From: Macrostomum lignano | Taxonomy: Eukaryota | Length of the DNA: 64,000 nucleotides | NCBI GenBank assembly: GCA_002269645.1 | Contig: NIVC01002518.1 | Location: 1 to 64,000, forward strand | Direction: 5' to 3' | In this document: positions 2,040 through 63,912 of the stretch, one piece after another | How positions within the stretch are numbered: position 1 is the first letter of the stretch | Layout of the letters: each line of letters begins with the position of its first letter | The notes under the pieces: generated by a model | The model's database searches: none | What the model was told of the DNA's origin: nothing | What the model saw: the letters and a program-made list of their open reading frames with translations, nothing else | Program-made: the position numbers and the translations under genes

Positions 2040-2325
2040 TACATAAAAACCAAGCAGCCTACAGCTATTAGCATTATAATCTATGGCCAAAACCGTTTGC
2101 AAGCTCTCACTGCCGAAAAAATACATTAGCGAGATGGGCAAAAACCTGTTTTCTGACAATTGAGAGGCCTCTTTAATTTGGATAGCTTATTAAAAATACG
2201 TGTACCGATTCCGGACAATTTGCCATCTAATGGTGCAAAAACGGAGAAAATCGGTCATTCCGTTCGCAAGATTTTCTGTTACAAGCAAACAAACAAACAA
2301 ACAAACTCAACTTTAGTATATAAGA
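2040..2325 (-). mobile_element. Partial Helitron-like element (5' part only)
   Basis: 5' end TCTTATATACTAAAG at 2325 followed by (TTTG)n; internal similarity to the ctatggcc...gctctcactgc segment of later units; no 3' hairpin/CTAG found. Confidence 0.55.
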
Positions 2326-2463
2326 CTAGCAATTTTCGCCCCCCGTTGGGGGACATCTGTATAGAATCTCTGTTCTCTACAAGGAATAAGAAGATAGCCA
2401 AATAAAGCTTTCACAAAGAAAACAGACAAACTACTCAAATGAAGTGCAATGCAAAAAGAAATC

Positions 2464-2580
2464 ATCCCAAGACAGCAAGCATCCCCCAGATAGCAAGCAT
2501 CCCCCAGATTGCAAGCATCCCCAAAATAGCAAGCATCCCCCAGATAGATAGCATCCCCAAATAGCAAACATCCACCAGAC
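2464..2580. repeat. 18-bp minisatellite (agcaagcatcccccagat), ~6 copies
   Basis: Direct tandem periodicity. Confidence 0.85.
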
Positions 2581-2671
2581 AATAAGTAGCTAGTGCGACA
2601 ATTTCCTTAGCATTATAGTGGCTCCTTCAAAATTCGCTCACTTTTACGTTTGAAATTGTGTATCTTTTATG

Positions 2672-4108
2672 TTCGACATGGTGGCTCCTTTATGTTCAAC
2701 ATGGTAGCTCTTTAATGTTCGACACGATGGCACTTTAATGTTTGACATGGTGGCTCTTTAATGATTGACATGGTAGCCCTTTAATGTTCAACATGGTGGC
2801 TCTTTAATGTTCGAAATGGTCGTTTTTATGTTTTACATTGTGGCTCTTTAATGCTCAACATGGTGGCTCTTTTATGTTTGAAATAAAGTCTCTTATATGT
2901 TTGACATGGTGGCTCTTTAATGTTCTACATGGTGGCTCTTTAATGTTCTACATGGTGGCTCTTTAATGTTCGACATGAAGTCATGTATATGTTTGATATA
3001 GAGTCACATATATGTTTTACATAGTGGCTCTTTTATGTTTGAAATGGTGGCTCTTTAATGTTCGATGTGGTGGCTCTTTAATGTTCGACATGGTGGCTCC
3101 TTAATGTTCGACACGATGGCTCTTTAATGTTTGACATGGTGGCTCTTTAATGTTTTACATGGTGGCTCTTTAATGTTTGACATGGTAGCTCTTTAATGTT
3201 TGACATGGTGGCTCTTTTCTGTTTGACATGATGGTTCTTTTATGTTTGAAATGAAGTCACTTATTTGTTTGACATGGTGAATCTTTTAAATGTTTTACAG
3301 GGCGGCTCTTTAATTTTCAACATGGTGGCTCTTTTATGTTCGACATAGTGGCTCCTTTATGTTCGACATGGTGGCTCTTTTATATTAGACATGGTGGCTC
3401 TTTAATGTTTGACATGGTGGCTCTTTAATGTTTGACATAGTGGCTCTTTAATATTCAACAAAGTGGCTCTTTAATGTTTGACATGGGGGGCATGGTAGCT
3501 GGCCAGGGATTGAGTATGGCTCTTTAATACTCAACAAAGTGGCTTTTTAATGTTTGACATGTTGACTCTCTAATGTTCAAAATGGTGGCTCTTTAATGTT
3601 TGACATGGTGGCTCTTTAATGTTCAACATAGTGGCTCTTTTATGTTTGACATGGTGGCTTCTTTATGTTTGACATGGTGGCTCTTTAATGTTCGACACGA
3701 TGGCACTTTAATGTTTGACATGGTGGCTCTTTTATATTAGACATGGTGGCTCTTTTATGTTCTACATGGTGGCTCTTTAATGTTTGACATGGTGACTCTT
3801 TAATGTTCAAAATGGGGGCTCTTTAATGTTTGACATGGTGGCTCTTAATGTTCAAAATGGTGGCTTTTTAATGTTCGACATGGTGGCTCTTTTAGGTTTG
3901 AAATGGGTGGCCTTATAATGTTTGACATTGTGGCTTGTTAATGTTCGACTTGGTGGCTCTTTTAGGTTTGAAATGGTGGCTCTTTAATATTTGACATGGT
4001 GGCTCTTTAATGTTTGACAAGGTGGCTCTTTAATATTTGACATGGTGGCTCTTTAATGTTTGACATGGTGGCTCTTTTATGTTCGACATGGTGGCTCTTC
4101 TATATTTG
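2672..4108. repeat. 23-bp minisatellite (catggtggctctttaatgtttga), ~60 copies
   Basis: Direct tandem periodicity with point variants. Confidence 0.95.
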
Positions 4109-4173
4109 ACATTGCGCTTCTTTTATGATTAGCAATTTTTTCTTTTCAAAGTGTTTTAATAAAAAATCATTTT

Positions 4174-4240
4174 GCGCTACTAAGATTCGAACCCAGGTCG
4201 CTACATTAGCAGTCCAGTCTGTTCGCATCTAGGCTATCTC
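4174..4240 (-). pseudogene. Degenerate tRNA-like sequence (tRNA pseudogene or SINE head)
   Basis: Minus strand has an A-box-like TAGCCTAGATGCG, an anticodon-loop-like CTGCTAA and a B-box GGTTCGAATC; stems are imperfect and there is no long variable arm. Confidence 0.55.
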
Positions 4241-5239
4241 TTTTTAATTGGAGAACATGAATTGTGGCCCTTATAATTCAATTCTTACAGCAAGTCAATT
4301 GGAGTAAAAAGTTATGACATAATCAATTTCTCAGTCAGCCAGTATCAGTCTCAATTCAAGTTAGCAATATGGTTACGCAATTTTAACCAAGTTGTGTGTG
4401 CATTTCTTCGACACTGTTTTCAATTTGTTGTGATGCAATCTTTATCAGAATTGAAATTCAGCCAGTCAGTTTTTTCTCTAGCATTCTTACAATGCATTTC
4501 AAGTCGAAAATTTTGCTTGACCTTTGCAAAAAAGCATGTTTTTCGAATATTTAATCCCTTTAACATTGAGCAATTTCTTAGCCAAGATGCATGTACCGTC
4601 CCAGGAAAATTTCTGATTGAATGGTACAAGTTTGAAGAAAATCGGTTGAGACAATTTTTCTGAAATCTATCGCATAGCTAGATACAGACAACTCATTTTT
4701 AGTATATAGGACTAGCCATTTAGCCCCCGCTGGGGAGCCTTGAAAATGACACCAATTGGTTTTTATTTTGGCACAAGAGTAACCTCACTATAATCATCCA
4801 AAATTTTGATTTCCAATAATCAAAAATTACCTTTTCTCATTTTGGCAGAAATAAATTGTCGTCAATCCGAATTTTATTAGCCAAAAAAGTTTCGTTCATC
4901 AGCTCAAAACCCTTTCTAAATCGGCAAATAGTGCTTATCCTTTCAAGCACAAACTCTTGATGCATATCGTCACTGGCCGGGGCATATTCTGATCCGCAGC
5001 AGGAGCTCAATATGCAAATCCCTGACGCCCTTAGACCCTCTCTCTAGATTAGCCTAAATCAAAGGATCAAACCAGCGCAAAGGATTAAATGCGCTGGTAT
5101 TTCCTATTAGCAGAAATCAGCATCACTTGTGTGTAATTTTTCATTATCTGAATTACATGAGCTACTTGAGCCGTACTACCTGACTATCTGACAATCGCCC
5201 AACAACCTAACACCCCCCAAAAAAATTTAGGCATCGTCC

Positions 5240-6050
5240 ATGAGCCTTGACGTCTCAGCAATTTCCACAGTAAGCCTTGAGATCTCAGAAATTATCCCAG
5301 TAAGCCTTGAGATCTCAGCAATTCCCCCAGTAAGCCTTGACATCTCAGCAATACCCCCAGTAAGCCTTGACGTCTGAGGAATTCCCCGAGTAAGCCTTGA
5401 AATCTCAGCATTCCACCAGTAAGCCTTGAGATCTCAGAAATTATCCCAGTATGCCTTGACATCTCAGCAATTCCCCCAGTAAGCCTTGACATCTCAGCAA
5501 TTCCCCCAGTAAGCCTTGACATCTCAGCAATTCCCCCAGTAAGCCTTGACATCTCAGAAATTCCCCAAGTAAGCCTTGAGATCTCAGCAATTCCCCCAGT
5601 AAGCCTTGACATCTCAGCAATACCCCCAGTAAGCCTTGACGTCTGAGGAATTCCCCGAGTAAGCCTTGAAATCTCAGCATTCCCCCAGTAAGCTCTGAGA
5701 TCTCAGCAATTCCCCCAGCAAGCCTTGACATCTCAGCAATTCCCCCAGTAAGCCTTGACATCTCAGTAAGCATAGAAATCTTAGCAATTCCCAGTAGGAC
5801 TTGACATTTTAGCAATTCCCAGTAGGACTTGACATTTTAGCAATTCCCAGAAAGCCTTGACATCTCAGCAATTCTTAGTAGGACTTGACATCTCAGCAAT
5901 TCCCCCATTAAGCCTCGACATTGCAGCAATTCTCCCAGCGCAGTATTTAGCCTTGACATCCCAACAGCCCAACTCCCCTCTCCCAAGAATTCAGCAATCC
6001 CCTTATAAGCCTTGACAACTCAGCTATTCCCCCCATGAGCTTAGATATCT
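5240..6050. repeat. 30-bp minisatellite (agtaagccttgacatctcagcaattccccc), array in unit B
   Basis: Tandem 30-bp period; gives spurious MSRLTGGIAE / LLRCQGLLGE ORFs. Confidence 0.95.
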
Positions 6051-7073
6051 TAGCAAGTCTTTAATTGATTGTTGACAGTGGTTAGTCTATGATTGAACCA
6101 AAACTGACCCTAAGCCCCCAAACCTACCCATAAGTGAGTCTTGGCAAAAAATTGCATGAATCCTTATAGGAAACAATGATTATTGTCACAAAGATAAATT
6201 CGCTGCTTCAATACAGACTCGAACTGCCGACCTTCTGCTAAAAGCCTTATACTATTCAAGAAGTTTAGTAACTTCGGCAGTTTGAAGTTAACCCCCCCCC
6301 CTGAAATCGGCAGTTATCTCCACAACATCCTGAAATTAGCTATCACTTCTAATCCCACAAACAGACTGCAGTCATACTCTTAGCAGCCTGCAGATATCCA
6401 CTGTGCCGTCTAAAACTTTCATTAACATCAGCAAACTACAATACTTCACTCAGCAGTCCGCAGTTATCCACTCAACAACTTGCACTTAATTCTTCACAGC
6501 TATTATCCACTTTAAACTCTGTAGATAGTTATCCCCTCAACAGTTTGCTGCTATGCACTCATAAGTGTGGAGGAACTACCTCAGCAGTTTGTTCCATTTT
6601 TCCCTTTGCAGTCTGCATGAATGATCCCTTTGACAATCTGCAGTTCCCCTCAGCATCTTCTGTTCTCCTTGCCAATAATCTTCCAATCTTCCAATAATCT
6701 AAAAATGTGCTCAGCATTTTACGGCTCACTAAACAATGTTCAGTACATATCGGCATTCTTTAAAAAACTCAAAATTTAGCAATACCTTTAAGCAATTTTA
6801 ACAGCATGGTGTGCAGTTAAATAGCAATTTCATACTTTCATGGTGCGAGGCAGTACTCGTTGATGGGATCAGTAATACACGAAGCAGTTTTTAAAAATCA
6901 AATTTAATAAGTGGCTTGTGCCAAGTAGCAAAAATTATTTGCTAATTAATAAAAAGTGTTGCAATTAAAATTAATAAAAAATATGTTATATTTAGTCGAG
7001 TCACAAGCTACAAATGAATGAATTTACTTATTTTAATTATCCACCGGGGAGGCGGACTCGAACCTTGTACCTT

Positions 7074-7433
7074 TTTTTATTATTAGAGGCAGGGGGGTTG
7101 TGTGCACCCTGGCGCACTTTAGGCGACATAGGCACACAACCGGCGAGAGGCATTGCTGCCCATTCCGCCGACTCCCCTGAGCAGGCATACAAGCGCGCGG
7201 ATACGTTACGCAGGCACACACTCACACAGGAGTGTACAGCGGCCCTAACTTTATCAATTGTTAGGCATGTACACTTCACTGCGCCTTGGGGGGTTGGCTC
7301 TCAAGGCCGTTAATTGCACAAGCGAGCCAAGCCGAAATTCCAATTCAGCCCCAAATTAATGTGACTGCACTTGGAATCGAGCCTGGGTCGCGGCACACCA
7401 GAGCAGCTGCGCTACCGCTGGGCTACGGCCCCC
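7074..7433 (-). mobile_element. Full-length tRNA-derived SINE (~360 bp) with 15-bp TSD
   Basis: Head GGGGGCCGTAGCCCAGCGGTAGCGC...GGCTCGATTCC (A and B boxes); A-rich tail TAATAATAAAAA; flanking direct repeat cgaaccttgtacctt at 7059-7073 and 7434-7448. Confidence 0.85.
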
Positions 7434-8611
7434 CGAACCTTGTACCTTACGCCTAGCCTAAACCTAGTCCTAGTGCCTACACTGCGGCTATTCCGCCTAC
7501 TAATGGAAGGGCGCAAAAATCAGACATATATGCTTCGGCACTGCAGTCAAATACATAGCAGTGATAGCCTGCTCAGTGTGCACAGTTTTGGTGCTGGCAG
7601 AGCCATTGCACAGTTAAGTAAATCTGTCAATTTCAATACTTTTAAAATGCACTGGCTGATTTCTCTCTCCCTCCAGAGTGCCTGCGCAATGCTTGGCACA
7701 CTGCCTCCTGCTGAAAAGCTCAGAGTCAGTTTATAGCGAGAATATGCAGTACGCAGTTGTGGCGCAATCATTTAGAATTGGAATTCAGCCAGTCAAGAAT
7801 TCAACGCTGCTTGGCCTTCCATTAAAAGCATTTAGATAAACTTGTTTTTCGAATATTTAATACCTTTAGCATTGAAGCAGATTAAAGAAATTTTAGCTGT
7901 CCTCTTTCCAGATAATTCAAAACTTTTGGCGAAAACGCGATCAAAATTGGTCAAGAATTGCAGTCTGTAGAGCGTTACGAAAAACAGATCTTTGACGCTT
8001 AAAGAGCTCGCTGCTAGCCTCCAGAATAATTTTATTTTTGACCCCTGGTATGGTTGCGCAATTTAAATAGAGTAATTATCTGGGCAGTGGGGCCCATGAG
8101 TTTTCTTATCAGTTGGCTCTGGCGCAATCATTAAAATTGGCTGTGAAGTTTTTCGCTGATAAAATTTTGCATTGAAAAAGCCCATTTAAAACAGTTTTTC
8201 GAATATTTAATCCCTTTAGCATTGAAGCAGATACAAGAAATTTTAACTGTCTTCTTTCCAGACAATTTTGAATCTTTTGGCGAAAACGCGATCAAAATCG
8301 GTGAAGAATTGCAATCTGTAGAGCGTTATGGACATACAAACCTTAGAGATTTAGTATATTTAGACTAGCCATTTAGCCCCCCTCCGGGTGGCTTCTTAGC
8401 AGTTTAGCGCTTGTCCATAAGCAGTTTTGCACAGTCGCTGAGCAAATCTCACTAATCTCCGAGAAGTTCTGCAGTAGCAAATCTCTAAGCAGTTGTACAC
8501 CAATTTTACTGAGACTAAAAAGTTCTAAAAAGTTACATTTCTTAATGTTTGAAACTTTGCAACGTCAATTCATTTATAGTTCTTTTATGATTATTCGTTA
8601 TATTCAAATCC

Positions 8612-9125
8612 TCACCAGATTAGCGCTATACTCCCATATTAGCCCTACACCTCCAGATTAGCCCCACTTCCCCCAGATTAGCACTACTCCCCCCATATTA
8701 GCCGCACACCCCCAGATTAGCCCCACTTCCCCCAGATTAGCACTACACCCAGATTAGCACTGCGCCCAGATTAGCACTCAGCCCAGATTAGCACTCAGCC
8801 CAGATTAGCACTCAGCCCAGATTAGCACTCAGCCCAGATTAGCACTCAGCCTAGATTAGCACTCAGCCCAGATTAGCACTCAGCCTAGATTAGCACTCAG
8901 CCCAGATTAGCACTCAGCCTAGATTAGCACCGCTCCACAGATTACCGCCGCTTCCCAGATAGTTTCACCTTCCCAGATTAGCACTACTTCTCCAGATTTG
9001 CACTACTCCGCAAAAATTTGCACCGCTACTTCCTCCAGATTAGCCCCAATCCCCCAGATTAGCCCCCCACTCCTTTATATTAGCCCCACTCCCTTAGATA
9101 GCACCGCTCCCCAGATTAGCACCAC
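8612..9125. repeat. 17-bp core minisatellite (gcccagattagcactca) with longer degenerate variants
   Basis: Near-perfect 17-bp period at 8764-8930; degenerate ccagattagc units on the flanks. Confidence 0.9.
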
Positions 9126-10117
9126 TCCCAAACTGCTAAAAGGTGACTACTATTATCGCCTCAGAAGTTTAAAGTTAAACCCTCCCCAGAAATTGGGAGT
9201 TATCCCCACAACAACCTGAAATTATCCCTTCTAATTCCGCAAAACAGACTGCAGTCATACAGCTCATTTGCACTCTACAACTTTTATTATTATTATTCAT
9301 TTATCCCTCAGGGACCCAGAATTGTCCCTTCTGCAAGCTACAATTATTCACAGTTAGATATCCGCCTCAGAAGTCTGCCATTATTATCCTAGTCTGCCAT
9401 TATTATCCTAGCAGTCTGCAGCTATCCACTCGGCAGTTTGCAGTTTGTCCCCTTTGCAGTCTGCAATGATCCTTTCAACAATCTGCAGTTCCCCTCAGTA
9501 GTCTGCAGTCAATTCATTTGCAGTCAGCAAGTGTTTCCTTAATAATTCTCATTTATCCCCTCAGCAGTCTGCAGTTCTCTCAGCTGGCCCCTCAGTATTT
9601 TCAGCAAACTGCAATGATCTTTTCAATTATTTAAAAATTTGCTCAGCATTTACGACGGCGCACTAATCAATTTTCGATACATATAGGCAGTCTTGCGCAA
9701 CTCAGCATTTAGCAATACCTCAGCAGTTTAGCAGCATCGTCTACTGCAATGATCCTTTCAACAATGTAGAAATTAGCTCAGCATTTTATGGCTCACTAAT
9801 CGATTTTCGATACATATCGGCAATCTCTTGCACCACTCAGCATTTAGCAATACCTCAGCAGTTTAGCAGCATCGTCTGCAGCTTAGTAATTTAATCCCCT
9901 GCAGTTTAGTAATATCTACTTCTATAGACCTAGATAATAACAATTAATGGGATCTTAGGATTTTACAAATCAAATCAAATTTGCTTAGTGGCTTGTGCGA
10001 GTAGCAAAAATAAATTATTGTAATTAATAAAAAAATTTAATTACAATTAATTAAAAAATGTTCAAAATAGTCGAGGCAGAAGCTACTAATGAATGAATTT
10101 ATTTAATTTTAAGTATC

Positions 10118-10205
10118 CGCTGGGGAGGCGGACTCGAACCTTGGACCTTATGCCTAGCCTAAACCTAGTCCTAGTGCCTACACTGCGGCTATTCCGCCTA
10201 CTGAT
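10118..10205 (-). other. tRNA-derived Pol III promoter-like segment inside Helitron units (other copies ~33612-33700, and 7041-7510 split by the SINE)
   Basis: Minus strand TAGCCGCAGTGTAGG (A-box-like) ... GGTTCGAGTCC (B-box); no complete cloverleaf. Confidence 0.55.
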
Positions 10206-10685
10206 CGGAGGGCGCAAAAATCAGCCATATATGCTTCGGCACAGCAGTCAAATACATAGCAGTGATAGGCTGCTCAGTGTGCACAAGTTGTGCAGGCAGA
10301 GCCAATGCAGAGTTGAGTGAAATCTATTAATAGCAATTGTCTATGCAGTCCGCCAGTCAGCCAGGGTCAGAATGTACACACGCAGCCACTGAGCATTATT
10401 TTCCTCTCCCTTATTGCAGCCAGTATTGAGGCGTACACAGTGAACAGAGAAAAGTTGTGGCGCAATCTTAATTGGAATTGAAATTCAGTTAGTGAGATTT
10501 TGACCTTTTCTAGCCTCCCATTGAAAGCATAGGGAAAACTCGTTTTTCGAATATTTAACCATCTTCCCATTCGAATTTTTTAAATGCAATTACACCCACA
10601 CAATCTCACAAGAATTTGCAATTGAATGAAGCAAGTTTGAAAAAAATCGGTTCAGGCATTCGGGCTGTGGACTGGAATACCGGTC

Positions 10686-10717
<32 letters not shown>

Positions 10718-10873
10718 CTTAGAGATTTAGTATATTGTGATTGCAGTCTCTAGAGCGTTATGGACATTCATTCATTCAAGCATACAAACCTTAGAGATTT
10801 AGTATATTTAGATAGAAGATTTAGAAGATAGAAGAAGATTAGAAGATTAGATTAGATAGAAGATAGATTTAGA

Positions 10874-11311
10874 CTAGCAATCTACGCCCCCCGTTGGGGA
10901 GCCAAAGAAATGCAATACACGTTTTTTTAATAAGCTACATGTATCCTTGAAATCTTAAAAAATCTCCTGTCAAACCTTGTAAGCCTTGACATGTCAGTTA
11001 TCCCCCCCCACAAGCTTTAACATATCAACTCCCCCCCTTGACATCTCAGCAATGCCCCAATAAGCCTTGGAAATCTAAAAATATTTGTCAACCTTCTAAC
11101 CCTAACCCTAGCCTAACCCTAACCCTAACCCTAACCCTAAAGCATTGAAATTTCAGTAATTCTCTCTAAGAGTCATTATAGCACTACTACAGCATTACAG
11201 GGGCGTAGCCAGAGGGGGGCAAGGGGGGCCGTGGCCCCCCCATAATCACCAACTCTGGCCTTGGCGCCCCCCCCTAAAAGAATATAGACATCACATTTTT
11301 AGTATATAGGA
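10874..11311 (-). mobile_element. Short chimeric Helitron-like unit D (438 bp)
   Basis: Hairpin + CTAG at 10874; unit-A-type 5' end TCCTATATACTAAAAATG at 11311; contains degenerate 30-bp repeats and (CCCTAA)n. Confidence 0.7.
11096..11140. repeat. Interstitial telomere-like (CCCTAA)n, ~7 copies
   Basis: ctaaccctaaccctagcctaaccctaaccctaaccctaaccctaa. Confidence 0.8.
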
Positions 11312-11320
11312 TTAGATAGA

Positions 11321-12871: not shown

Positions 12872-12899
12872 AGATAGAATAAGATTTAGTATATTTAGA

Positions 12900-17852: not shown

Positions 17853-17861
17853 AGAAGAAGA

Positions 17862-29200: not shown

Positions 29201-29381
29201 CCTTGGTTGAGTTGCAACTTTTTGGTGAAAACGCGATCGAAATTGGTCATGAATTGCAGTCTGTAGAGCGTTTTACACGGACAGACAGACAGACATAGAT
29301 TAGAGATTTAGTATATAGAAGATTATGGACAAGCAAGCAAGCAAGCAAGCATACAAATATTAGAGATTTAGTATATTTAGA
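26253..29381 (-). mobile_element. Helitron-like unit M; 30-bp arrays 26330-28065
   Basis: Hairpin + CTAG at 26253; stacked 5' ends at 29319 and 29381. Confidence 0.8.
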
Positions 29382-29393
29382 AGATTAGATAGA

Positions 29394-32300: not shown

Positions 32301-34631
32301 ATCTGGGAGCAGATGGCTACTGATCTCCATATGCTTCTCAATAATCGAAACCATTTGAAATGTTTGCAACTTGCAGTTTAAAATTGATTTGCAATTCTCT
32401 TGCATATTTATTAATTCATTGTACGTCAGATTAGCACTGCTCACCCAGATTAGACCCTTTGCAAATTAGCACTTACAGCAGATTAGCACTGCTCTAGAAG
32501 ACTAACGCAGCCCCAGCAAAAGTATCTTTAAATTTAAGTGTTTACCATCTCCATGAATCTGCATAGTATGCAATCATTATTGTCACAGGTCATAAAGATA
32601 AATTCGCTGCTTCAATGCAGGCTCGAACTGCTGACATCAAAGCATTCTGTTTGCTTCTGCTTGATACTGCCTGCCTACTGCGGCTATTGTGCCTATTGAC
32701 ATGTGGTCGAAATAATCTAGTTTAGCAACTTCAGCCGTTTGAAGTTAACCCCCGGAAATCGGCATTTATCCCCACAACAACCTGAAATTATCCCTTCATC
32801 TAATCCCGCAAAAAGACTGCAGTTATTTCTTAGCAGCCGGCATTTATCATCCACTTTGCATTTTAAAACTTTTATTAAAATTAAGAATGCATACCCTCAG
32901 CGGCATAGAATTGTCCCCTTAGCCAAAAATATTTCACTTAGCAGCCGCAGAAATCCCCTAAACAACTTGTACTTAGTCTTCCACAGTAAATATCCACTCA
33001 AAACTCAATAGTTAGTTATAAGCCTCAGAAGTCTGCCATTATCCTCTAATTAGTCCGCAGTTTTCCCTCTCAGCAGTCTGCAGCTATACGCTCATACGTC
33101 TGGAGGAACTACCTCAGCAGTTTGCAGTTGTTTCCCCTTTGCAATCTGCAATGATCCCTTCGACAGTCTGCAGTTCCCCTCAGCAGTCTGCAGTCATTTC
33201 ATTTTCAGTCTACAACTGTACCATTAACGATTTTCATTCATTCTCTCAGCAGCCTGCAGTTCTCCTCTCGGCCGGCTCCTCAGTCTCCTCTGCAAACTGC
33301 AATTTGCTCAGAATTGTACGGCTCACTAATCAATTTTCGATACATATCGGCAGTCTTGAAAAGCTCAGCATTTAGCAGCATTTTCTGCAGTTTAGTAGTT
33401 TCGTACTTTTATGGAGCTAGACAATACCCATTGATGGGATCAGTTATACTCGAAGCAGTTTTTACAAATCAAATTTGATTAGTGGCTTGTGCCGAGTAGC
33501 AAAAAATGAATTGCTAATTAATAAAAAAATGTTTCAATTGAAATTAAATAAAAATGTTTCAATTAGTCCAGGCACAATCTATAAATTATTGAATTATTTG
33601 AATTTTTATTATCCGCCGGGGAGGCAGACTCGAACCTTGGACCTTACGTCTAGCCTAAACCTAGTCCTAAGTGCCTACACTGCGGCTACTCCGCCTATTG
33701 ATGGGAGGACAACAAAATCAGCCATATATGCTTCAGAACTGCATTTAAATACATAGCAGTGATAGGCTGCTCAGTGTGTAGGCGTGCAGGCGGAGCCAAT
33801 GCACAGTTGATTGAGTGAAATCTATAAATAGCAATTTTCTATGGAGTCCGCCAGTCAGAGCCAGGGTCAGAATGTACACACGCAGCCACTGAGCATTTTT
33901 TCTCCTTGCACACTGCAACCAGTATTGAAGCTTACACAGTGGAGAGAGAAAAGTTATGGCGCAATCATAATTGGAATTGGAATTCAGCCAGTCCAGTCAA
34001 GAATTCAACCTTGCTTGGCCTTCCATTAAAAGCATTGGGAAAACTCGTTTTTCGAATATTTGATACCTTTAGCATTAAAGCCAATTAAAGAAATTTTAAC
34101 TGTCTTCTTTCCAGTTAATTACAAATCTTTTCGTAAAAACGCGATTAAAATTGGTCAATTGGTTCTATCTCTAGAACGTTATGCAAATACTAACACAAAT
34201 TCTCTTCGAGTGAAAGTCACACGAAGCAGCTATGACATAATCAAATACTCAGGCAGTCAGCATCAGTCTCAATTAAAGTTAGCAATATGGTTACGCAATT
34301 TCTGTCTTTCAACTTGGCACAGTGTTTTCAACTTGTTGTGATGCAATCTTTATCAAAATCAGAATTCAGTCAGTCGGTTTTTCTCTAGCATTCTTACAGC
34401 GCATTTCAAGTCGAAAGAGCTGCTTGACCTTTGCAAAAAAGCATGTTTTTCGAATATTTAATCCCTTAAGCATTGAAGCAGATACAGGAAATTTTAACTG
34501 TCTTCTTTCCAGACAATTTTGAATCTTTTGGCGAAAACGCGATCAAAATCGGTGAAGAATTGCAATCTCTAGAGCGTTATGGACAAGCAAGCATTCAAAC
34601 ATACAAAGCTTAGAGATTTAGTATATTTAGA
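29394..34631 (-). mobile_element. Composite Helitron-like unit N (related to unit B)
   Basis: CCCCAGCGGGGG hairpin + CTAG at 29394; 5' end at 34631; 30-bp array at 29905-30660 decaying rightwards; two 5'-region copies. Confidence 0.75.
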
Positions 34632-34707
34632 TTAGAAGAAGACTAGAGCGTTATGGACAAGCAAGCAAGCAAGCATACAAACCTTAGAGATTTAGTATAT
34701 TTAGATT

Positions 34708-34898
34708 TGTAAGACCAGAATTGCGAGAAAATCAGTACGAGGGCTCAAAGGCCAAGTTAGTCGATATATATATTTGTCATTCACTATGTACGCGCGTACA
34801 TTTCGATCGATATAGGTTCAGGTGAATAAAAGCGTGCCCAACCCCCCAGCGCAGGCCAACCCCCAAAACAGCCAACACAACGAACACCAAAACTCACA
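34708..34898 (-). repeat. 3' LTR (191 bp)
   Basis: tgtaagacc...aaaactcaca; matches 39485-39675. Confidence 0.97.
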
Positions 34899-34911
34899 CC
34901 ACTTTCCCCCC
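34899..34911 (-). promoter_or_regulatory. Polypurine tract
   Basis: GGGGGGAAAGTGG immediately upstream of the 3' LTR on the minus strand. Confidence 0.85.
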
Positions 34912-34955
34912 AAGCACGAGGAATAAAACTCTATGGCAAAAGTTCAAAAAAAGGT

Positions 34956-37900
34956 TCACTCAGGGCGATAAAAATCAGGAGGCCTCCGCTGTCGTACCGA
35001 ACGTCTTAGCGCTGGTGGGACGACCGGGTCGATTGCTGCTTCGGTGTCACCGTCGTCATCGTCATTGCCGCCTGACAGCTGAGCCCAGGCGTCAGGCACA
35101 CCCAGCTGCTCAGGACTGGTGCTGGTAGCCGGAGCCGGCTGCTGCTCATCGGTCAGTTGCAGAGAGCCGCGCCGCTTCACGAATGGCTTGAGGCGGTCAT
35201 GGTGCACCACGAGCTTGCGACGCCGCCGAACCGCTAGGCCAGGTGCCAGCCGCACTCGATAGTTGACCTCACCCAGCCGCTTGAGAACGACGTAGGGCCC
35301 CGTCCAGCGGTTGCTGAGGCTCTTGGAGCGACCAGGCTTCACCGTCTTGCAGCTTAGCATGACCAGATCGCCTTGGTTGTAGGGCTGAAACCGCACGTCC
35401 TTGTTGTATCGTTCGTTTCTATCAGTCTGCGCGCTCTGAAGCTTCTGGTGGACGAGCCTCCGACTCTGCAAAAGCCGTTTCTGAACATCCTCGACGTACT
35501 CCAGAGTATCCGAAGCGCCGCTGTTGGTGTGCGGCAGCTTGACATCAAGCGGCAGTCTTGGTGGCCAACCGTGTAGCACTTGAAACGGAGACAGACCAGT
35601 CGTACAGTGCGCAGAGCTGTTGAATGCCCATGTGACAAAAGGCAGCTGTACATCCCAGTCGTCCTGGCTTTCCGCTACGACCGTCGCCAACATGTTACCG
35701 AGAGTGCGGTTTCCGCGCTCCACCAGGCCGTTGCCACTCGGATGAAACGGGGAAGTTCGAGTCTTCCGCATACCGAGCTGCTCACACAGAGACTGAAACA
35801 GCTGGCTCTCAAATTGCCGGCCCTGGTCACTGTGAATCGTGTCCGGAACTCCGTGACGTAGGGCTACTTGATGGACCAGAACATCAGCAACTCGCTCGGC
35901 TTCGATACTTGGTAGAGCACGGGTTTCCATCCATTTGGAGAAGCAGTCGCAGATGCTCAGAATGTAGCTGTTGTCTCGAGGCGTCCTTGGCAACGGCCCC
36001 TTAATGTCGATTTGCACGGTCTCCCACGGTCGCGCCGGCTGTGCTGTACTCTGCAGTGGAGCTCGCTGAGGGCGACTATTGTTCTTGCGCCGAAGGCATG
36101 CTGCACAGCTGGCCACCCAGTTCTGGACATCCTGCTGCATTTTTGGCCACCAGCAGCGCTCACGCAACTTCTGTAGTGTTCTGTCCGCGCCGAGGTGACC
36201 GCTAGCGGCTGCATCGTGGGCGTCGGCCAGGAACTCGGCTCGCAGATGGCTCGGAACGACCGGCTTTCCTTGCCTGACCAGCGCGCCATGCGGTCCGATC
36301 TCAATTCCGTCATCGCCCAAGAACTCCTCGACCTTCTGCTGACCGCTGTTGGACAGGTGCTCGCGTCCCTCGGTGAGCGCCTTGAAGACACTCTGCAGAA
36401 GCGCATCGCGCTGCTGTTCCTCTAGGAAGTCTTGATCCCTGCTGCTGTCGAGCTGAGTGGTGGCGGTTCGACTCAACATGTCCGGGACGACATTCTCTCG
36501 ACCAGGCCGATAGCAGAGCGTGAAGTTGAACTGCTGAATCGTGTCAAGCCAGCGCGCCAGACGCCCTTCAGGTTCCTTAGTCTGTAGCAGGCCCTTCAGT
36601 GGCTGATGATCGGTGAACGCGGTGAAGTGCTTTACGTTACACAGGTATGACCTGAAATGTTTTAGGCTCCAGACTAAGGCGAGCAGTTCTCTGTCGGTAG
36701 CTGAGTAGTTCCTTTCTGCCTTATTCAGAGTTCTTGAGGCAAAAGCGACTGGCAGTTCCGAATCTCCGTGTGCCTGACTGAGAACCGCGCCGACTGCAAA
36801 TGCGCTTGCATCGCAACTCAGGATGAAGGGCCGGCTAAAATCTGGGAGTCTAAGCACGGGAGCCTGGCAGATCATTTCCCTTAGTTTGGTGAAAGCGCTC
36901 TCACACTCATCCGTCCAGGTGAAGCCGGTCTTTTGCGTTGCTGCATGCAGAGGCGCGGCTATCCTGCTGAAGTCTTGGATGAATCGCCGGTAAAATCCAA
37001 GCATGCCGATGAATCGCCTCACTTCCTCAGCTGAACTCAGCGTCTTAATCTTCGATAAAGCTTCCACCTTACTGGGGTCTGGCTGAATTCCCTCGCTGCT
37101 GACCACATGGCCCAGGTACTTGACACTACGGTACGCAAACACGGACTTATCCTTGTTCAGTTTCAGACCAGCGCTTCGAAGCCGTTCAAAAACCCGTCGT
37201 AGGCTGACTAGATGCTGATCAAAGCTCTTACTGAACAATATTAGATCATCCACGTAGACCAGGACCTCCTCCCATGTGAGGCCAGACATGATCAGCTCCA
37301 TTAGTCGTTGGAACGTAGCCGGCGAGTTGCACATTCCAAATCCCATTTTCTTGAACTGCATGAGTCCTCTGGTAGAGTAAAACGCCGTCTTGTAGCGGTC
37401 GGCTTCCTCAACTTCCACTTGATTGAAACCCTGCTTGCAATCGATTGTCGTGAACCAAGAGCAGCCTGAGAGCGCGTCCATGGACTGTTGTAGGTGTGGG
37501 AGCGGATAGGCGTCCTTTACCGTAGCGGCATTCAGCTGGCGCCAGTCAGTGCAGATGCGGATGTCTCCGTTCTTTTTCTTGACCACGATCAAATTGCTGG
37601 CCCATGGAGAGCTAGACGGCTCAATGATGTCGTGCGCAAGCATCTGGCCAATCTTGTCGTCGACTCGGTCTCTCAGCGGCAGGGGGAGCGGGCGCTGGCG
37701 CTGCCTGAATGGCCGTGCTCCGGGCTCGAGCTCGATGTGGTGCTTTAGTACGCTTGTGGAGCCGAGGTCAAACTCGTGAGTGCTGAACAGGTCGTCGTTG
37801 GCTTTCAAGATGGTCATCAGCTTGTCTCTTTCTAGCTCTGTCAGTTCGGGGTTCACGTCCCAGTTCTTCAGTTTCTCCTTCACGTTCCCAACCGGTTCGA

Positions 37901-38620
37901 GTACATCAGCAGCTTCGAATTCACCGACTGCTTTGTTGGCATACAGTGTTACTGCCTCGGATCCCAGATTGCACATGAGAACGGGAATCCTCTGATCGGC
38001 GGACAAGGCGAGAACTCGGGATGCCAGCAGACCGGTCTCTTGCGTAAACTCCGCATTCGGCTCGAAAACGCCCTGCTCATCTTTTGACTTCACTCGCAGC
38101 CAGACCAGCTTCTCACTCCTGGCGGGGACGTTGATGTTGCACTCAATGCGGGCCACCAGGGTCCCGGTCACCATTTGAATTTTTGAGCTGTTGGTGAAAA
38201 ACGGCACGGCCTCATCATTAAAGAAGACAGTCTTGTTGTTGATGTTAATCCGTAGCTCGTTGGTTGCCCGACCGATAAAGTCCATCCCTAGGATAAGGTC
38301 TACGCTTATTCCCTCTACGACGTTGAATACATGGTCCAATCGAGTCGTCTCTCCAACTTGAACTGTTCCCCGGGCTGTTCCGAGGCACTGCAGGCGACTA
38401 CCGTCTACTGACGTTGGACAGCAGCTGCTCCCGGACTCGAGCTGCAGGCCGCATGACCGCATGAGGCTGTGGCTGATGAGGGATGTCTGCGCACCAGTGT
38501 CGAGCAGGAAGCAGACCGGCTTTTCTTGCAGCAGGGCACGCACAAAAACAGAATGAGCAGTCTGGGCACTTACTTGGCGGGTTGGGGCTGGCCCGTCGCC
38601 TCCAACCCTCAGAAGTTTCC
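34956..38620 (-). CDS. pol: Pol polyprotein (aspartic protease, RT, RNase H, integrase), in the -1 frame relative to gag
   Basis: LLDTGA protease, YVDD RT, RNase H (CDASAFAVG...RELLA), HHCC, DIKGP/DQGRQF/VERGN integrase and GPY motif; the frame stays open upstream of the track start (38543) to the gag slippery site. Confidence 0.97.
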
Positions 38621-38621
38621 C
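38579..38621 (-). promoter_or_regulatory. Putative -1 programmed ribosomal frameshift signal
   Basis: G GGA AAC heptamer (38621-38615), 6-nt spacer TTCTGA, then hairpin GGGTTGG-A-GGC/GCC-CCAACCC (38608-38579); pol is in the -1 frame. Confidence 0.8.
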
Positions 38622-39445
38622 GCCGGCCGGGCTTTACTTGGGCAGACCGCTGCATTGTGGCCCCAACCGGAGCAGTTGAAGCACCGACCTTGCTTGTGGG
38701 CACCTTTAGTTGGACATCTGCGCGCGATGTGACCGTCTTTGCCGCACTGGTAGCAACCGGATGTTCTCTGGGCCTGCCGACGGTCACCTGGTCCAGCGCG
38801 GCCTCCTCTAGCGGCGCCGCTTGTCACGGCAGCTGTCAGTGTCTCCAGCTGCTGCTCGAGTCGGGACAGCCGGTCGTCAACCACGGAGACCATAGACGAA
38901 CTTGCGGGCGTGTTCTTGCTCATCACCTGCTCTAGTCTGGTGGCTCTCTCGACCAGCGTGCCCAGCGTGCATGTATCCGAGTCGCTCTCCTTGAGCAGGG
39001 CTTCGCGTATCCCTGCGCTTAATAGCTGGATAATTCTAAACTTGACCTCCCGATCACGGAGCGTTGATGGGTCATCCGGGCGGGCTCCCATGTACAGCAG
39101 CCTGAGAGCGAATGAGAGCTCCCTGATTGACTCGCCATTCTTGCGTTGTCGACCTTGGAACTCCTGCATGGCGCGGTGCTGATTGGCAGAGCCGCCGTAC
39201 TGCTGGAGAAGAAGTGCCTTGATTTTCTCATAACTCTTTTTATCGGCATCTGACATGTCCCAAACACAGACCTGGGCCTCCCCTCTCAGCAGGAGCTTCA
39301 CTTTGGAGGCACGCTTTGCATCGTCCCAATTCTTGTCTTCGGCGAAGTCTTCAAAGATGCTCAGCCAAAAGTGCACGTTTGATTGGCCACTAAACTTGGG
39401 CGGTAGCAAACTGGCGTCGTTGCTCTTCTCATCTCGCTCTTCCAT
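38609..39445 (-). CDS. gag: Gag (278 aa from the first ATG) with two CCHC zinc knuckles
   Basis: CYQCGKDGHIARRC and CFNCSGWGHNAAVC; located between the PBS and pol. Confidence 0.93.
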   Translation of the reverse strand: MEERDEKSNDASLLPPKFSGQSNVHFWLSIFEDFAEDKNWDDAKRASKVKLLLRGEAQVCVWDMSDADKKSYEKIKALLLQQYGGSANQHRAMQEFQGRQRKNGESIRELSFALRLLYMGARPDDPSTLRDREVKFRIIQLLSAGIREALLKESDSDTCTLGTLVERATRLEQVMSKNTPASSSMVSVVDDRLSRLEQQLETLTAAVTSGAARGGRAGPGDRRQAQRTSGCYQCGKDGHIARRCPTKGAHKQGRCFNCSGWGHNAAVCPSKARPAGNF

Positions 39446-39472
39446 TCTGATCTGCCAACTTGAATTGGGCTT

Positions 39473-39483
39473 CGCTGCCACCA
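39473..39483 (-). promoter_or_regulatory. Primer-binding site, tRNA-Leu type
   Basis: TGGTGGCAGCG lies 1 nt after the 5' LTR and is complementary to the ...CGCTGCCACCA 3' end of eukaryotic tRNA-Leu(AAG/TAG). Confidence 0.85.
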
Positions 39484-39484
39484 G

Positions 39485-39675
39485 TGTAAGACCAGAATTG
39501 CGAGAAAATCAGTACGAGGGCTCAAAGGCCAAGTTAGTCGATATATATATTTGTCATTCACTATGTACGCGCGTACATTTCGATCGATATAGGTTCAGGT
39601 GAATAAAAGCGTGCCCAACCCCCCAGCGCAGGCCAACCCCCAAAACAGCCAACACAACGAACACCAAAACTCACA
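39485..39675 (-). repeat. 5' LTR (191 bp)
   Basis: Matches 34708-34898. Confidence 0.97.
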
Positions 39676-40008
39676 GATTAGAAGATTTAGTATATTTAGA
39701 TTATGGACAAACATACAAACAAACCTTAGAGATTTAGTATATTTAGATTTTAACCATACAATCCTGGGCTGATTACAAATCTTTTGGCGAAAACGCGATA
39801 AAAATCGGTGAAGAATTGCAATCTCTAGAGCGTTATGGACAAGCAAGCATACAAATATTAGAGATTTAGTATATTTAGAAGATTAGATAGAAGATAGAAG
39901 ATGAGTAAAATATGAAAGAGATCCATATAAAAGATAAAATGGGCTACACATTAAGTCTGATGTAACTTCGTTTTGAGCGCGCAGGATGGCCAGGTGGATG
40001 GATGCGCT

Positions 40009-40128
40009 CTCTGGTGTCCTCTGGTGTCCTCTGGTGTCCTCTGGTGTCCTCTGGTGTCCTCTGGTGTCCTCTGGTGTCCTCTGGTGTCCTCTGGTGTCCT
40101 CTGGTGTCCTCTGGTGTCCTCTGGTGTC
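40009..40128. repeat. 10-bp tandem repeat (ctggtgtcct) x12
   Basis: Perfect periodicity. Confidence 0.97.

Positions 40129-56750: not shown

Positions 56751-56962
<212 letters not shown>

Positions 56963-58207: not shown

Positions 58208-63912
<5,705 letters not shown>

What the first reader, a model, noticed from the sequence alone, without database searches (positions are those of the whole stretch)
2040..39901. ~38-kb unidirectional Helitron stack: different subfamilies joined CTAG|TC, suggesting targeted insertion at resident 5' ends
Seen: at least 13 units of very different length (0.34-5.2 kb) and sequence, all on the minus strand. Direct 3'-CTAG|TC-5' junctions occur at 2325/6, 4711/2, 8364/5 and 20927/8; near-direct ones occur elsewhere. 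Established: Helitrons normally insert between host A and T, and rolling-circle concatemers repeat the same element. Inference: because neighbours are often different subfamilies, the pattern fits the transposase reusing the nick site at a resident 5' TC as its preferred target, building a self-targeting landing pad.
Basis: partly seen in the sequence, partly recalled or inferred. Interest (0 to 1): 0.85.

Follow-up and report, generated by a model that had tools for sequence, protein, structure and literature searches.

The report
Head-to-tail Helitron array in a flatworm
A 38-kb stretch of the flatworm Macrostomum lignano genome is a one-directional pile of at least 17 non-coding rolling-circle transposons (Helitrons) joined end to start; it is a large, clear example of a known Helitron habit and fits, but does not prove, the idea that these elements insert at each other's ends.

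Summary
Window 2,326-39,901 is a minus-strand array of non-autonomous canonical Helitrons (5' TC, G/C hairpin 13 nt before 3' CTAG) from Macrostomum lignano. All 17 intact 3' CTAG ends are followed by T and, within 66 nt, by a Helitron 5' core. Five junctions are exact CTAG|TC: the four reported plus 12899/12900.

Corrections:
- 34,708-39,675 is a young Ty3/gypsy retrotransposon, not a Helitron.
- One 172-bp 3' fragment is inverted.
- Many neighbours are the same family (U9-U13 93-99.6% identical; U5-U8 form a 423-bp tandem).
- The 3' limit near 2040 cannot be defined.

New points:
- 5' termini outnumber 3' ends, with stubs of 15-155 nt.
- Non-direct junctions are filled with (TCT/TCTA/TCTAA/TCTAAA)n, the reiterated first 3-6 nt of the 5' end. 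These tracts occur only upstream of 5' cores.
- Two 99.6%-identical copies have similarity ending exactly at the unit termini, and each has its CTAG directly on an intact resident 5' end.

This favours insertion at resident terminal nick sites. The idea is not new (maize 2008, Fusarium 2016). The resident 3' nick, remobilised chimeras and local duplication remain open. No genome-wide test was possible.

The parts
39757..39901 (-). 5' boundary of the array. Host ...ACTCA| is followed by a 22-nt filler (TCT TCTA TCT TCTA TCTAA TCT). Then comes a 123-nt 5' stub of an A-type Helitron that breaks off at GGTTAAAA|T.
39676..39756 (-). Two further 5' stubs (47 nt ending TCCATAA, and 18 nt) plus TCT/TCTAA units. 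This is the upstream half of the leader that the gypsy insertion split.
34708..39675 (-). Ty3/gypsy LTR retrotransposon, not a Helitron. LTRs at 39485-39675 and 34708-34898 are 100% identical. The target duplication is AATC. The gag (zf-CCHC) and pol (1195 aa) reading frames are open.
34643..34705 (-). A 63-nt mini-element. It is the first 63 nt of an A-type 5' end, ending at the internal CTAG and followed by T. Copies of about 59 nt sit at 12044-12102 and 12467-12525.
29394..34642 (-). U14, 5.2 kb. It has an A-type 5' end behind filler TCT TCT TCTAA, and a class-b 3' hairpin-CTAG at 29394. It is related to U2 (87%).
26253..29393 (-). U13, B family. Its 5' end is filler, then a 66-nt A-type stub, then TCT and a B-type terminus.
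23560..26252 (-). U12, B family. Its 5' junction is CTAG|TATA-TATAC, with no TC. It contains an inverted copy of the 3'-terminal 172 bp at 25671-25841 (plus strand).
20928..23559 (-). U11, B family. It is 99.6% identical to U9 over 845 bp. Its 3' CTAG sits directly on the intact 5' terminus of U10.
17862..20927 (-). U10, with an A-type 5' terminus (direct junction 20927/8) and a class-a 3' end.
12900..17861 (-). U9, B family, with a 3.6-kb 30-bp minisatellite. Its 5' end is TCTTCTTCT, a 44-nt A-type stub, TCTTCTTCT, then the B-type core. Its 3' CTAG sits directly on a TCTAAATATAC terminus (12899/900).
11321..12899 (-). U5-U8: four short elements (351-435 bp) with a class-c hairpin (GCTGGCAGCCAGC), arranged as a 423-bp tandem repeat with mini-elements and 15-19-nt 5' stubs.
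10874..11320 (-). U4, 447 bp. It has a C-type 5' end (TCCTATATAC) behind filler TCTA TCTAA, and it carries telomere-type (TTAGGG)n. A solitary relative lies at L003:15007-15305.
8365..10873 (-). U3. Its 5' complex is a 61-nt filler of 15 units, then a roughly 80-nt A-type stub, then a 5'-truncated terminus with (GTCT)n.
4712..8364 (-). U2. It is a short class-c element with a decayed 3' end (about 8003-8364) followed by a 5'-truncated larger element (4712-8002). The larger element carries a nested 363-bp dispersed repeat at 7072-7434.
2326..4711 (-). U1. It has a C-type 5' terminus (direct junction 4711/2) and a 1.5-kb 23-bp tandem repeat. A 90% relative lies at L004:1727-2321.
2040..2325 (-). 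U0. It has a 5' terminus TCTTATATACTAAAG (direct junction 2325/6). No hairpin-CTAG 3' end could be found, so the lower boundary is uncertain.

Best explanation
What it is. This is a nest of non-autonomous canonical Helitrons. A RepHel transposase encoded elsewhere in the genome mobilises them.

How it grew. The array grew mainly by repeated same-strand integration at the terminal nick sites of copies already there. I favour the 5' boundary (x|TC of the left terminal sequence) as the target. The transposase is built to recognise and nick that boundary on that strand. With a host A in front it is a legal A|T target, and it is followed by 82% A+T DNA.

The proposed reaction. The 3' G of the incoming element is joined to the resident 5' T, which gives CTAG|TC. 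The upstream flank is joined to the newcomer's 5' TC. The newcomer ends up directly upstream in the same orientation.

Other processes on top of this:
(1) Insertions a few to about 150 nt inside a resident 5' region, followed by remobilisation from the outer 5' end, produce elements with several 5' termini (stubs).
(2) The first 3-6 nt of the 5' end are reiterated: (TCTA0-3)n.
(3) Local tandem duplication (U5-U8) and growth of minisatellites and microsatellites.
(4) A very recent Ty3/gypsy insertion.

Shown here: the sequences, the orientation, the unit-sized young copies and the clean 3' junctions. Inferred: the chemistry, the direction of growth, and the choice of 5' over 3' boundary. No host function is implied.
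For: - Termini are far above chance and share one strand. There are 21 5' termini (0.01 expected) and 14 hairpin-CTAG ends on the minus strand.
- All 17 intact 3' ends are followed by T and by a 5' core within 4-66 nt. Five are exact.
- Exact junctions join unrelated bodies: U1/U0, U2/U1, U3/U2a.
- U9 and U11 are 99.6% identical over 845 bp and about 97% through the minisatellite. Identity falls to 95% just beyond the 5' core and to about 82% beyond CTAG. The copied segment is therefore exactly one Helitron unit.
- Both young copies have their CTAG directly on an intact resident TCTAAATATAC.
- The array's upstream edge is host A|TC.
- Heterogeneous (TCTA0-3)n tracts occur only directly upstream of Helitron 5' cores (10 tracts) and do not arise from shuffling.
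- The family is rare outside arrays. About 165 kb of other M. lignano DNA holds one 3' end and one 5' locus.
- Literature. Helraiser cleaves single-stranded left terminal sequence exactly at flank|TC, prefers AT targets with AT-rich DNA on the 3' side, and joins CTAG to TC precisely in circles (PMC4778049). Insertion at host-A plus resident-T was proposed for maize (PMC2267711). Helitrons insert near or inside other Helitrons.
Against: - This is one locus, and it was picked because it looks like this.
- The only termini sampled without that bias do not abut the opposite end of another Helitron. L003 has a 3' end on host DNA. L004 has a 5' end with host DNA upstream.
- The resident 3' boundary CTAG|T is also a natural nick site and gives the same junction.
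- Two junctions lack TC (CTAG|TATA...). Four have a TAA or TAAA spacer.
- The remainder of the interrupted top stub is absent from the window. At least some blocks therefore arrived as chimeras rather than as single units.
- U5-U8 look like local duplication.
- No RepHel gene was found, no empty or filled site pair was available, and there are no read-level data.
- The origin of the (TCTA0-3)n filler is unexplained. This genome also carries long pure (TCTA)n microsatellites (56.7 kb).
Confidence: 0.5

Rival explanations
1. Same chemistry, other end. Newcomers are joined at the resident 3' boundary (CTAG|T), so the array grows downstream rather than upstream.
For: The transposase also cleaves exactly at the end of the right terminal sequence (PMC4778049). 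Du et al. listed this order as one of two options. Ten of 14 hairpin ends are followed by TC, which would then be clean 5' ends of newcomers.
Against: - It needs a G|T target rather than A|T.
- The two youngest copies (U9, U11) have clean 3' junctions onto intact resident 5' termini. Their own 5' sides are irregular: (TA)n without TC, or a stub plus filler.
- The most decayed unit (U0, with no 3' end left) lies at the 3' extreme. That fits upstream growth.
Confidence: 0.15
2. Composite elements. Units were joined elsewhere and arrived here in a few events as multi-unit blocks. Joining could be by 3'-end bypass, by nested insertion followed by remobilisation from an outer 5' end, or by joining the ends of two elements processed together.
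For: - 5' termini outnumber 3' ends, and stubs end at A|T-type breakpoints with no remainder in the window.
- The same 'A-type stub plus B-type element' design recurs in U9 and U13.
- L004 shows a 155-nt stub followed by a full 5' end at a site that is not an array.
- The Fusarium and maize models predict exactly this.
Against: - It explains extra 5' termini but not 14 complete end-to-start junctions in one place.
- It does not explain two unit-sized 99.6% copies sitting 5.7 kb apart in the same array.
- No second copy of any multi-unit block was seen in the other loci.
Confidence: 0.2
3. Local amplification. A small initial cluster expanded by unequal crossing-over, replication slippage or gene conversion, without further transposition.
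For: U5-U8 form a 423-bp tandem with near-identical junctions. The U12-U11 pair resembles the U10-U9 pair (96% and 99.6%). Minisatellites and microsatellites in the units are clearly unstable.
Against: - Identity changes abruptly at unit termini (99.6% to 95% to 82%), not at arbitrary breakpoints.
- Neighbouring units have unrelated bodies and different hairpin classes.
- Junction fillers differ between otherwise similar pairs.
Confidence: 0.1
4. Assembly artefact. The array is a chimera or mis-join of long noisy reads across dispersed Helitron copies.
For: The source is a repeat-rich long-read assembly. The window differs from the deposited contig NIVC01000455.1 by indels in its right-hand part.
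Against: - Units differ in length, body and junction filler, which collapse or mis-join would not create.
- A gypsy element with perfect LTRs and a target duplication sits cleanly inside a leader.
- Junctions obey the CTAG|T rule 17 times out of 17.
Confidence: 0.05

Closest known systems
Adjacent head-to-tail Helitrons No.1/No.2 in the maize r1 region (Du et al. 2008, PMC2267711)
   Same: Two different Helitrons are joined CTAG|TC with no host A between them. The authors showed independent insertions by presence/absence among inbred lines. They proposed insertion at the AT made of host A plus the resident 5' T, or at the G|T after a resident 3' end.
   Different: That case is two units in a plant. 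This one is at least 17 units plus stubs in a flatworm, with oligonucleotide filler at many junctions and no polymorphism data.
Helibat tandem arrays in Myotis lucifugus and centromeric Helitron arrays in plants (Pritham & Feschotte 2007; Xiong et al. 2016; as cited)
   Same: Perfect head-to-tail junctions and arrays in one orientation, attributed to rolling-circle replication.
   Different: Those arrays repeat the same (often truncated) element. Here many neighbours have unrelated bodies and different 3' hairpins. Only U5-U8 behave like such an array.
Fusarium oxysporum FoHeli elements with multiple 5' termini, and three tandem copies in Metarhizium acridum (Chellapan et al. 2016, PMC5148889)
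   Same: Duplicated short 5' pieces (31-85 nt there, 15-155 nt here). The explanation offered is self-insertion near a 5' end followed by remobilisation from the outer terminus. [quoted passage not shown]
   Different: FoHelis are Helitron2-type, with asymmetric terminal inverted repeats. The elements here are canonical TC...hairpin-CTAG. The 3-6-nt prefix reiteration is not mentioned in the passages of that paper that I read.
Maize Helitron preference for inserting near or inside other Helitrons (Yang & Bennetzen 2009, cited in PMC12477314 and PMC3288121)
   Same: Clustering of Helitrons with Helitrons, and elements with multiple termini (28.7% of maize helA elements).
   Different: I could not read the original paper. 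It reports a regional preference. Here the junctions are nucleotide-exact.
Prokaryotic HUH transposons IS608 and IS91 (background in PMC5876387, and my own knowledge)
   Same: Single-strand HUH transposition with site-specific integration and no target duplication. For IS608 the target sequence is the same as the sequence at the left-end cleavage site. The proposal here uses the same logic.
   Different: Those are bacterial elements with no helicase fusion (IS608). Target choice by base pairing with the transposon end is shown for IS608 and is not shown for any Helitron.
Telomere-targeting Helitrons of Paramecium aurelia (PMC13085455)
   Same: A Helitron clade with strand-specific, sequence-specific targeting that forces a single orientation and builds stacked, satellite-rich non-autonomous copies.
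   Different: [quoted passage not shown] Here the apparent target is another Helitron's terminus at an interstitial locus.

Membership tests
Canonical Helitron (Helitron1 / HLE1 type), non-autonomous | 5' terminus begins with TC | tested here: met
   Termini are TCTAAATATAC, TCCTATATAC, TCTTATATAC or TCTATATAC in 15 of 17 unit starts. U11 and U12 begin TATATA with no TC.
Canonical Helitron (Helitron1 / HLE1 type), non-autonomous | 3' terminus CTRR | tested here: met
   CTAG is present at all 14 hairpin-bearing ends and at 3 mini-element ends.
Canonical Helitron (Helitron1 / HLE1 type), non-autonomous | Short G/C hairpin 10-15 nt upstream of the 3' end | tested here: met
   A 5-7-bp stem ends 13 nt before the terminus in all classes. 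The stem sequence differs between classes (CCCCC/GGGGG versus GCTGG/CCAGC) but the position is kept. Folding z-scores alone are weak (-0.2 to -2.1).
Canonical Helitron (Helitron1 / HLE1 type), non-autonomous | Insertion between host A and T without target-site duplication | tested here: inconclusive
   The array's 5' edge is host A|TC. The solitary L003 3' end is CTAG|T. The L004 5' end is preceded by T, not A. No single element has both host flanks visible, and no empty site was available.
Canonical Helitron (Helitron1 / HLE1 type), non-autonomous | A RepHel-encoding autonomous partner in the same genome | not tested
   There is no RepHel reading frame in the window, and Pfam finds nothing in the internal ORFs.
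Helitron2 / Helentron | Asymmetric terminal inverted repeats, hairpins at both ends, TT or T(T/C) target | tested here: not met
   In the aligned 3' terminal 70 nt I saw no inverted copy of the 5' terminus (by eye, no dedicated search). There is a single 3' hairpin and TC...CTAG ends.
Rolling-circle concatemer of one element | Consecutive units are copies of the same element with identical junctions | tested here: not met
   This holds only for U5-U8 (423-bp period, 90-96% identity). Elsewhere neighbours share only their termini.
Site-specific (self-targeting) transposon | Genome-wide excess of insertions at the proposed target over other sites | not testable with these tools
   The M. lignano genome could be reached only in eight 18-28-kb pieces. 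The public metagenome and viral collections gave only chance matches.
Ty3/gypsy LTR retrotransposon (the 34,708-39,675 insert) | LTRs with TG...CA ends, a short target duplication, and gag with a zinc knuckle plus pol with RT, RNase H and integrase | tested here: met
   The LTRs are 191 bp and 100% identical, with TG...CA ends and an AATC duplication. Gag has zf-CCHC. Pol is 98% identical to an M. lignano protein carrying RVT_1, RNase H and rve domains.

The most novel reading that the evidence does not exclude
The M. lignano Helitron transposase may truly target its own left-end nick site, as IS608 targets the sequence at its left-end cleavage site. Arrays like this one would then be self-renewing landing pads that soak up most new insertions and spare genes. 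The (TCT/TCTA/TCTAA/TCTAAA)n tracts would be molecular scars of repeated nicking, short resynthesis and rejoining, or of repeated insertion within the first six bases. That would give a readable record of individual transposition attempts. A further reading that is not excluded: the one-directional stack (Helitrons plus a same-strand gypsy) acts as a uni-strand small-RNA source locus.
Probability: 0.25. Interest if true: 0.65.

Novelty: new member of a known kind. Interest (0 to 1): 0.4.

Why it matters
How Helitrons choose targets is still poorly understood beyond 'A|T in AT-rich DNA'. Heterologous head-to-tail neighbours have been reported as isolated cases since 2008, without a decisive test between the possible insertion orders.

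This locus packs about 17 junctions into one place. It includes very young copies and a graded series of 5' stubs and prefix repeats. That makes it a good natural substrate for deciding which terminus is used as a target, and for designing in vitro assays with defined oligonucleotides.

If end-targeting is real, it would explain why Helitrons cluster and acquire multiple termini, and how they can amplify while limiting damage to host genes. If it is not, the locus is still a well-resolved example of how Helitron nests seed minisatellites and tandem arrays in an animal genome.

Tried and rejected
1. I tried to find other Helitron loci through proteins.
   - The minisatellite-encoded ORF gave no scored hit. 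This wasted one of three protein searches.
   - Twenty window ORFs, including ones at the array edges, are not in the protein collection as exact sequences. They could not be used to fetch other haplotypes or lines.
2. I scanned the metagenome and viral collections for the 17-nt 5' core. All 120+ and 19 matches are chance hits in unrelated AT-rich DNA, and none continues into the Helitron sequence.
3. I sampled the M. lignano genome through gypsy and 14-3-3 relatives: seven further loci of 18-28 kb, about 165 kb. Only one solitary 3' end and one 5' locus turned up. This is too few for any enrichment statistic.
4. I tested simple nested insertion. The remainder of the interrupted top stub (TTCCTTGTATC...) is nowhere in the window after any CTAG. 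Plain nesting is rejected for that stub.
5. I considered whether the filler is an ordinary microsatellite. It is not a pure repeat, it cannot be reproduced by shuffling, and it is confined to 5' termini. Slippage as a contributor cannot be excluded.
6. I considered captured genes or RepHel remnants inside units. There are no Pfam domains.
7. I considered tRNA-derived parts. ARAGORN found none.
8. I could not read Yang & Bennetzen 2009 or Pritham & Feschotte 2007. Their findings are cited second-hand.

Full report
SOURCE AND SETTING

The window is animal DNA from the free-living flatworm Macrostomum lignano. Its 14-3-3 reading frame (50,607-51,287) is 100% identical to BOX15_Mlig012117g1. That gene lies on contig NIVC01000455.1 of assembly GCA_002269645.1.

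The deposited contig is a close variant of the window, not a copy of it. It is 99.8% identical over window 40,866-47,614 and 98.8% over 47,611-51,686. Beyond that there are indels, including a 366-bp repeat present in the contig but absent from the window.

To the right of the finding lie a RING-finger reading frame (40,195-41,187, minus strand), the 14-3-3 gene and collagen-like sequence.

WHAT IS THERE

From about 39,901 down to 2,326 the minus strand is a continuous series of non-autonomous Helitrons.

- 3' ends. Each consists of a short G/C hairpin ending 13 nt before a terminal CTAG. Ten ends are of the type CCCCCAACGGGGGG-CTTAAATTG-CTAG. Four carry a different stem, GCTGGCAGCCAGC.
- 5' ends. 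They read TCTAAATATACTAAATCTCTAA, followed by a variable tetranucleotide microsatellite and then a conserved box (TCCATAACGCTCTAGAGATTGCAATTCTTCACCGATTTTGATCGCG). Related variants begin TCTATATAC, TCTTATATAC or TCCTATATAC.
- Counts. The 22-nt 5' terminus occurs 21 times with up to 3 mismatches, always on the minus strand, against 0.01 expected. The 3' pattern occurs 11 times against 0.19 expected.
- Coding capacity. There is no RepHel reading frame in the window. The internal reading frames have no Pfam domain. The units are filled with a 30-bp minisatellite (up to 3.6 kb), a 23-bp repeat and other short arrays.
- Type. The elements are canonical (Helitron1-type), not Helitron2 or Helentron. 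Their ends are TC...CTAG with a single 3' hairpin, and in the aligned 3' termini I saw no inverted copy of the 5' terminus (checked by eye only).

CHECK OF THE OBSERVATION

The four exact junctions reported (2325/6, 4711/2, 8364/5, 20927/8) are correct. There is a fifth at 12899/900.

I counted the 14 hairpin ends plus three 59-63-nt mini-elements that end at an internal CTAG, which makes 17 ends. All 17 are followed by T, and all 17 are followed by a 5' core (TATACTAA) within 4-66 nt.

| Junction type | Number |
|---|---|
| Exact CTAG\|TC onto a 5' terminus | 5 |
| (TCTA0-3)n filler | 6 |
| TAA or TAAA spacer | 4 |
| (TA)2-3 spacer, no TC | 2 |

The four TAA/TAAA junctions amount to two independent events, because they sit in a duplicated 423-bp unit.

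The units measure 351-5,366 bp.

Four corrections are needed:

1. 34,708-39,675 is a Ty3/gypsy retrotransposon. It has 191-bp LTRs that are 100% identical, TG...CA ends, an AATC target duplication, and open gag and pol frames. It sits in a Helitron 5' leader and is very young.
2. A 172-bp copy of a 3' terminus lies inverted at 25,671-25,841.
3. Many neighbours are not different subfamilies. U9-U13 are one family (93-99.6% identical). U5-U8 are a 423-bp tandem. Almost all units share a related 130-150-nt 5' region, so one transposase or closely related ones could serve them all.
4. The unit at about 2040-2325 has a 5' terminus but no identifiable 3' end.

(a) More 5' termini than 3' termini. 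Short 5' stubs of 15-19, 44-66, about 80 and 123-155 nt sit in front of full 5' ends. Two stubs break at A|T positions of the family sequence: GGTTAAAA|T in the window and GAAA|T at L004. The remainder of the interrupted top copy is not in the window.

(b) Prefix-repeat filler. Every filler parses completely as a string of TCT, TCTA, TCTAA and TCTAAA, which are the first 3-6 nt of the 5' terminus.
- The longest tract is 61 nt and 15 units, at 10,813-10,873.
- The two longest tracts are never reproduced in 100,000 shuffles.
- Heterogeneous tracts of this grammar occur only directly upstream of Helitron 5' cores (10 tracts). One of them sits at the host/array boundary at 39,874-39,901.
- The only other matches are one pure (TCTA)n microsatellite and one trivial TCTTCTTCT.
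- The tracts therefore belong to 5' ends, not to the preceding 3' ends.

(c) A young pair.
- U9 and U11 are 99.6% identical over the 845-bp unique 5' part and about 97% identical through the minisatellite.
- Similarity starts at the 5' core and ends at CTAG. Beyond the 5' core it drops to 95%, and beyond CTAG to about 82%.
- The copied segment is therefore exactly one Helitron unit, which points to transposition rather than arbitrary segmental duplication.
- In both copies the 3' CTAG sits directly on an intact resident TCTAAATATAC (20927/8 and 12899/900).
- Their own 5' sides differ sharply: (TA)n in U11, stub plus TCT repeats in U9. The 5' leader therefore changes much faster than the body.

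HOW COMMON IS THIS IN THE GENOME?

I could sample only about 165 kb of other M. lignano DNA, through relatives of the gypsy pol and 14-3-3 proteins.

- That DNA contains no match to the A-type 5' core.
- It holds one solitary 3' end whose CTAG is followed by ordinary host sequence (L003:15,303/4, a relative of U4).
- It holds one relative of U1 whose 5' end has host DNA upstream and a 155-nt 5' stub in front of the full terminus (L004).

The family is therefore strongly clustered. Solitary copies exist, and stubs are not peculiar to this array.

The metagenome and viral collections hold no relatives.

MECHANISM

Established background:
- The bat Helitron transposase Helraiser cleaves single-stranded left-end DNA exactly between flank and TC, and cleaves exactly at the right end.
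- It forms circles in which CTAG is joined precisely to TC.
- It can end at cryptic sites when the hairpin fails (PMC4778049; PMC5876387).

Best reading. A resident 5' boundary is a site the enzyme recognises and nicks on the right strand. It is followed by 82% A+T sequence. With a host A in front, it is a legal A|T target.
- Using that nick as the target nick joins the incoming 3' G to the resident 5' T. The newcomer is placed directly upstream in the same orientation, and a fresh 5' boundary is recreated.
- This explains the exact junctions between unrelated units, the single orientation, the clean 3' junctions of the two youngest copies, the host A at the upstream edge, and the most decayed unit lying at the 3' extreme.
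- Stubs follow from insertions slightly inside a resident 5' region, followed by remobilisation from the outer terminus. This is the model drawn for Fusarium (PMC5148889) and for maize (PMC3288121).
- The mini-elements fit premature termination at the internal CTAG, 59-63 nt from the start.
- The (TA)n at two junctions recalls the variable TA-repeat footprints reported at maize Helitron excision sites (cited in PMC10095026). This is only a lead.
- The origin of the prefix repeats is unexplained. Possibilities are repeated insertion within the first six bases, abortive nick-and-resynthesis cycles, or slippage.

Rivals.
- The resident 3' boundary is an equally natural nick site. Junction sequence alone cannot exclude it. 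I rate it lower because it needs a G|T target and fits the young copies less well.
- Composite elements certainly contribute.
- Local duplication certainly contributes for U5-U8.
- Mis-assembly is unlikely. The junctions are regular but diverse, and a cleanly inserted gypsy element sits inside the array. Read-level confirmation is still missing.
- A further possibility is that local orientation bias stems from strand-specific access to single-stranded DNA during replication, as in bacterial IS200/IS605 elements (my own knowledge). That would explain the orientation but not the exact junctions.

COMPARISON WITH WHAT IS KNOWN

- Head-to-tail Helitron junctions and arrays have been reported in bat, maize, rice, Drosophila and plant centromeres.
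- Two different maize Helitrons joined CTAG|TC were shown to be independent insertions. Both possible insertion orders were spelled out, including the AT formed by host A and the resident 5' T.
- Maize Helitrons are reported to insert near or inside other Helitrons, and 28.7% of helA elements have multiple termini.
- Strand-specific, sequence-specific Helitron targeting that forces one orientation is documented for telomeric repeats in Paramecium.
- I found no paper describing Helitrons in M. lignano.

The finding is therefore a new, unusually large and informative member of a known kind, not a new kind. The prefix-repeat tracts are the one feature I did not find described.

VERDICT

- Confidence that this is a real heterogeneous head-to-tail Helitron array: about 0.9.
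- Confidence that it grew mainly by integration at resident terminal nick sites, with the 5' boundary favoured: about 0.5.
- Interest: 0.4.

Noticed in passing
window 34708-39675 (minus strand): A Ty3/gypsy LTR retrotransposon with 100% identical 191-bp LTRs, an AATC target duplication, and open gag (zf-CCHC) and pol (1195 aa) frames. It looks like a very recent, possibly active copy. Its pol is 98% identical to BOX15_Mlig029272g4 on another contig. It has the same orientation as the Helitrons.
   Followed up: partly
window 25671-25841 (plus strand): An inverted copy (95-96% identical) of the 3'-terminal 172 bp of the B-family Helitron, lying inside U12 between its minisatellite and its 5' region. 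It ends CTAG|T. Its origin is unclear: a 5'-truncated opposite-strand insertion or an inverted duplication.
   Followed up: partly
window 10807-10873, 39874-39901, 29376-29393, 34626-34642, 17847-17861, 12866-12878, 11659-11671: Heterogeneous tracts made only of TCT, TCTA, TCTAA and TCTAAA, which are prefixes of the Helitron 5' end. They occur only immediately upstream of 5' cores, including at the host boundary. I did not find this described in the papers read.
   Followed up: partly
window 11108-11150 (inside U4); L003 about 15070-15090: Telomere-type repeats, (CCCTAA)n on the plus strand and so (TTAGGG)n on the Helitron strand, are carried inside the 447-bp U4 element. Degenerate copies appear in its solitary relative on another contig.
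   Followed up: no
window 7072-7434; L001 13602-13965; L004 8156-8402; L003 5887-5976: A dispersed repeat of about 365 bp is nested in U2. A 96.7% copy, in inverted orientation, is present in the deposited contig NIVC01000455.1 at a position (between window-equivalent 55,660 and 56,240) where the window has none. This is a presence/absence difference between two versions of the locus.
   Followed up: partly
window 40866-57000 versus L001: The window is not identical to the public contig that carries the same 14-3-3 gene (99.8% identity, then 98.8%, then indels). It is another haplotype, duplicate or assembly version. This makes a direct comparison of the array between versions feasible for anyone with the full assembly.
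   Followed up: partly
window 34643-34705, 12044-12102, 12467-12525: Mini-elements of 59-63 nt. Each is a Helitron 5' end that stops at an internal CTAG and is followed by T, as if transposition had terminated at a cryptic 3' end without a hairpin.
   Followed up: partly
window 40009-40128, 55747-56286, 56738-56965, 59779-60230, 63599-63788: Very regular tandem repeats lie outside the array: (CTCTGGTGTC)12 perfect, about 100 bp from the array edge; a 27-bp unit x20 at 99%; (AGAT)57; (CAGA)113; (AGTA)47. The genome is unusually rich in tetranucleotide microsatellites, which bears on the filler question.
   Followed up: no
window 4000-32000: There is strong negative GC skew on the plus strand (-0.2 to -0.38), caused by the C-rich strand of the 30-bp minisatellite. 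The Helitron sense strand carries one GGGGG run per repeat.
   Followed up: no
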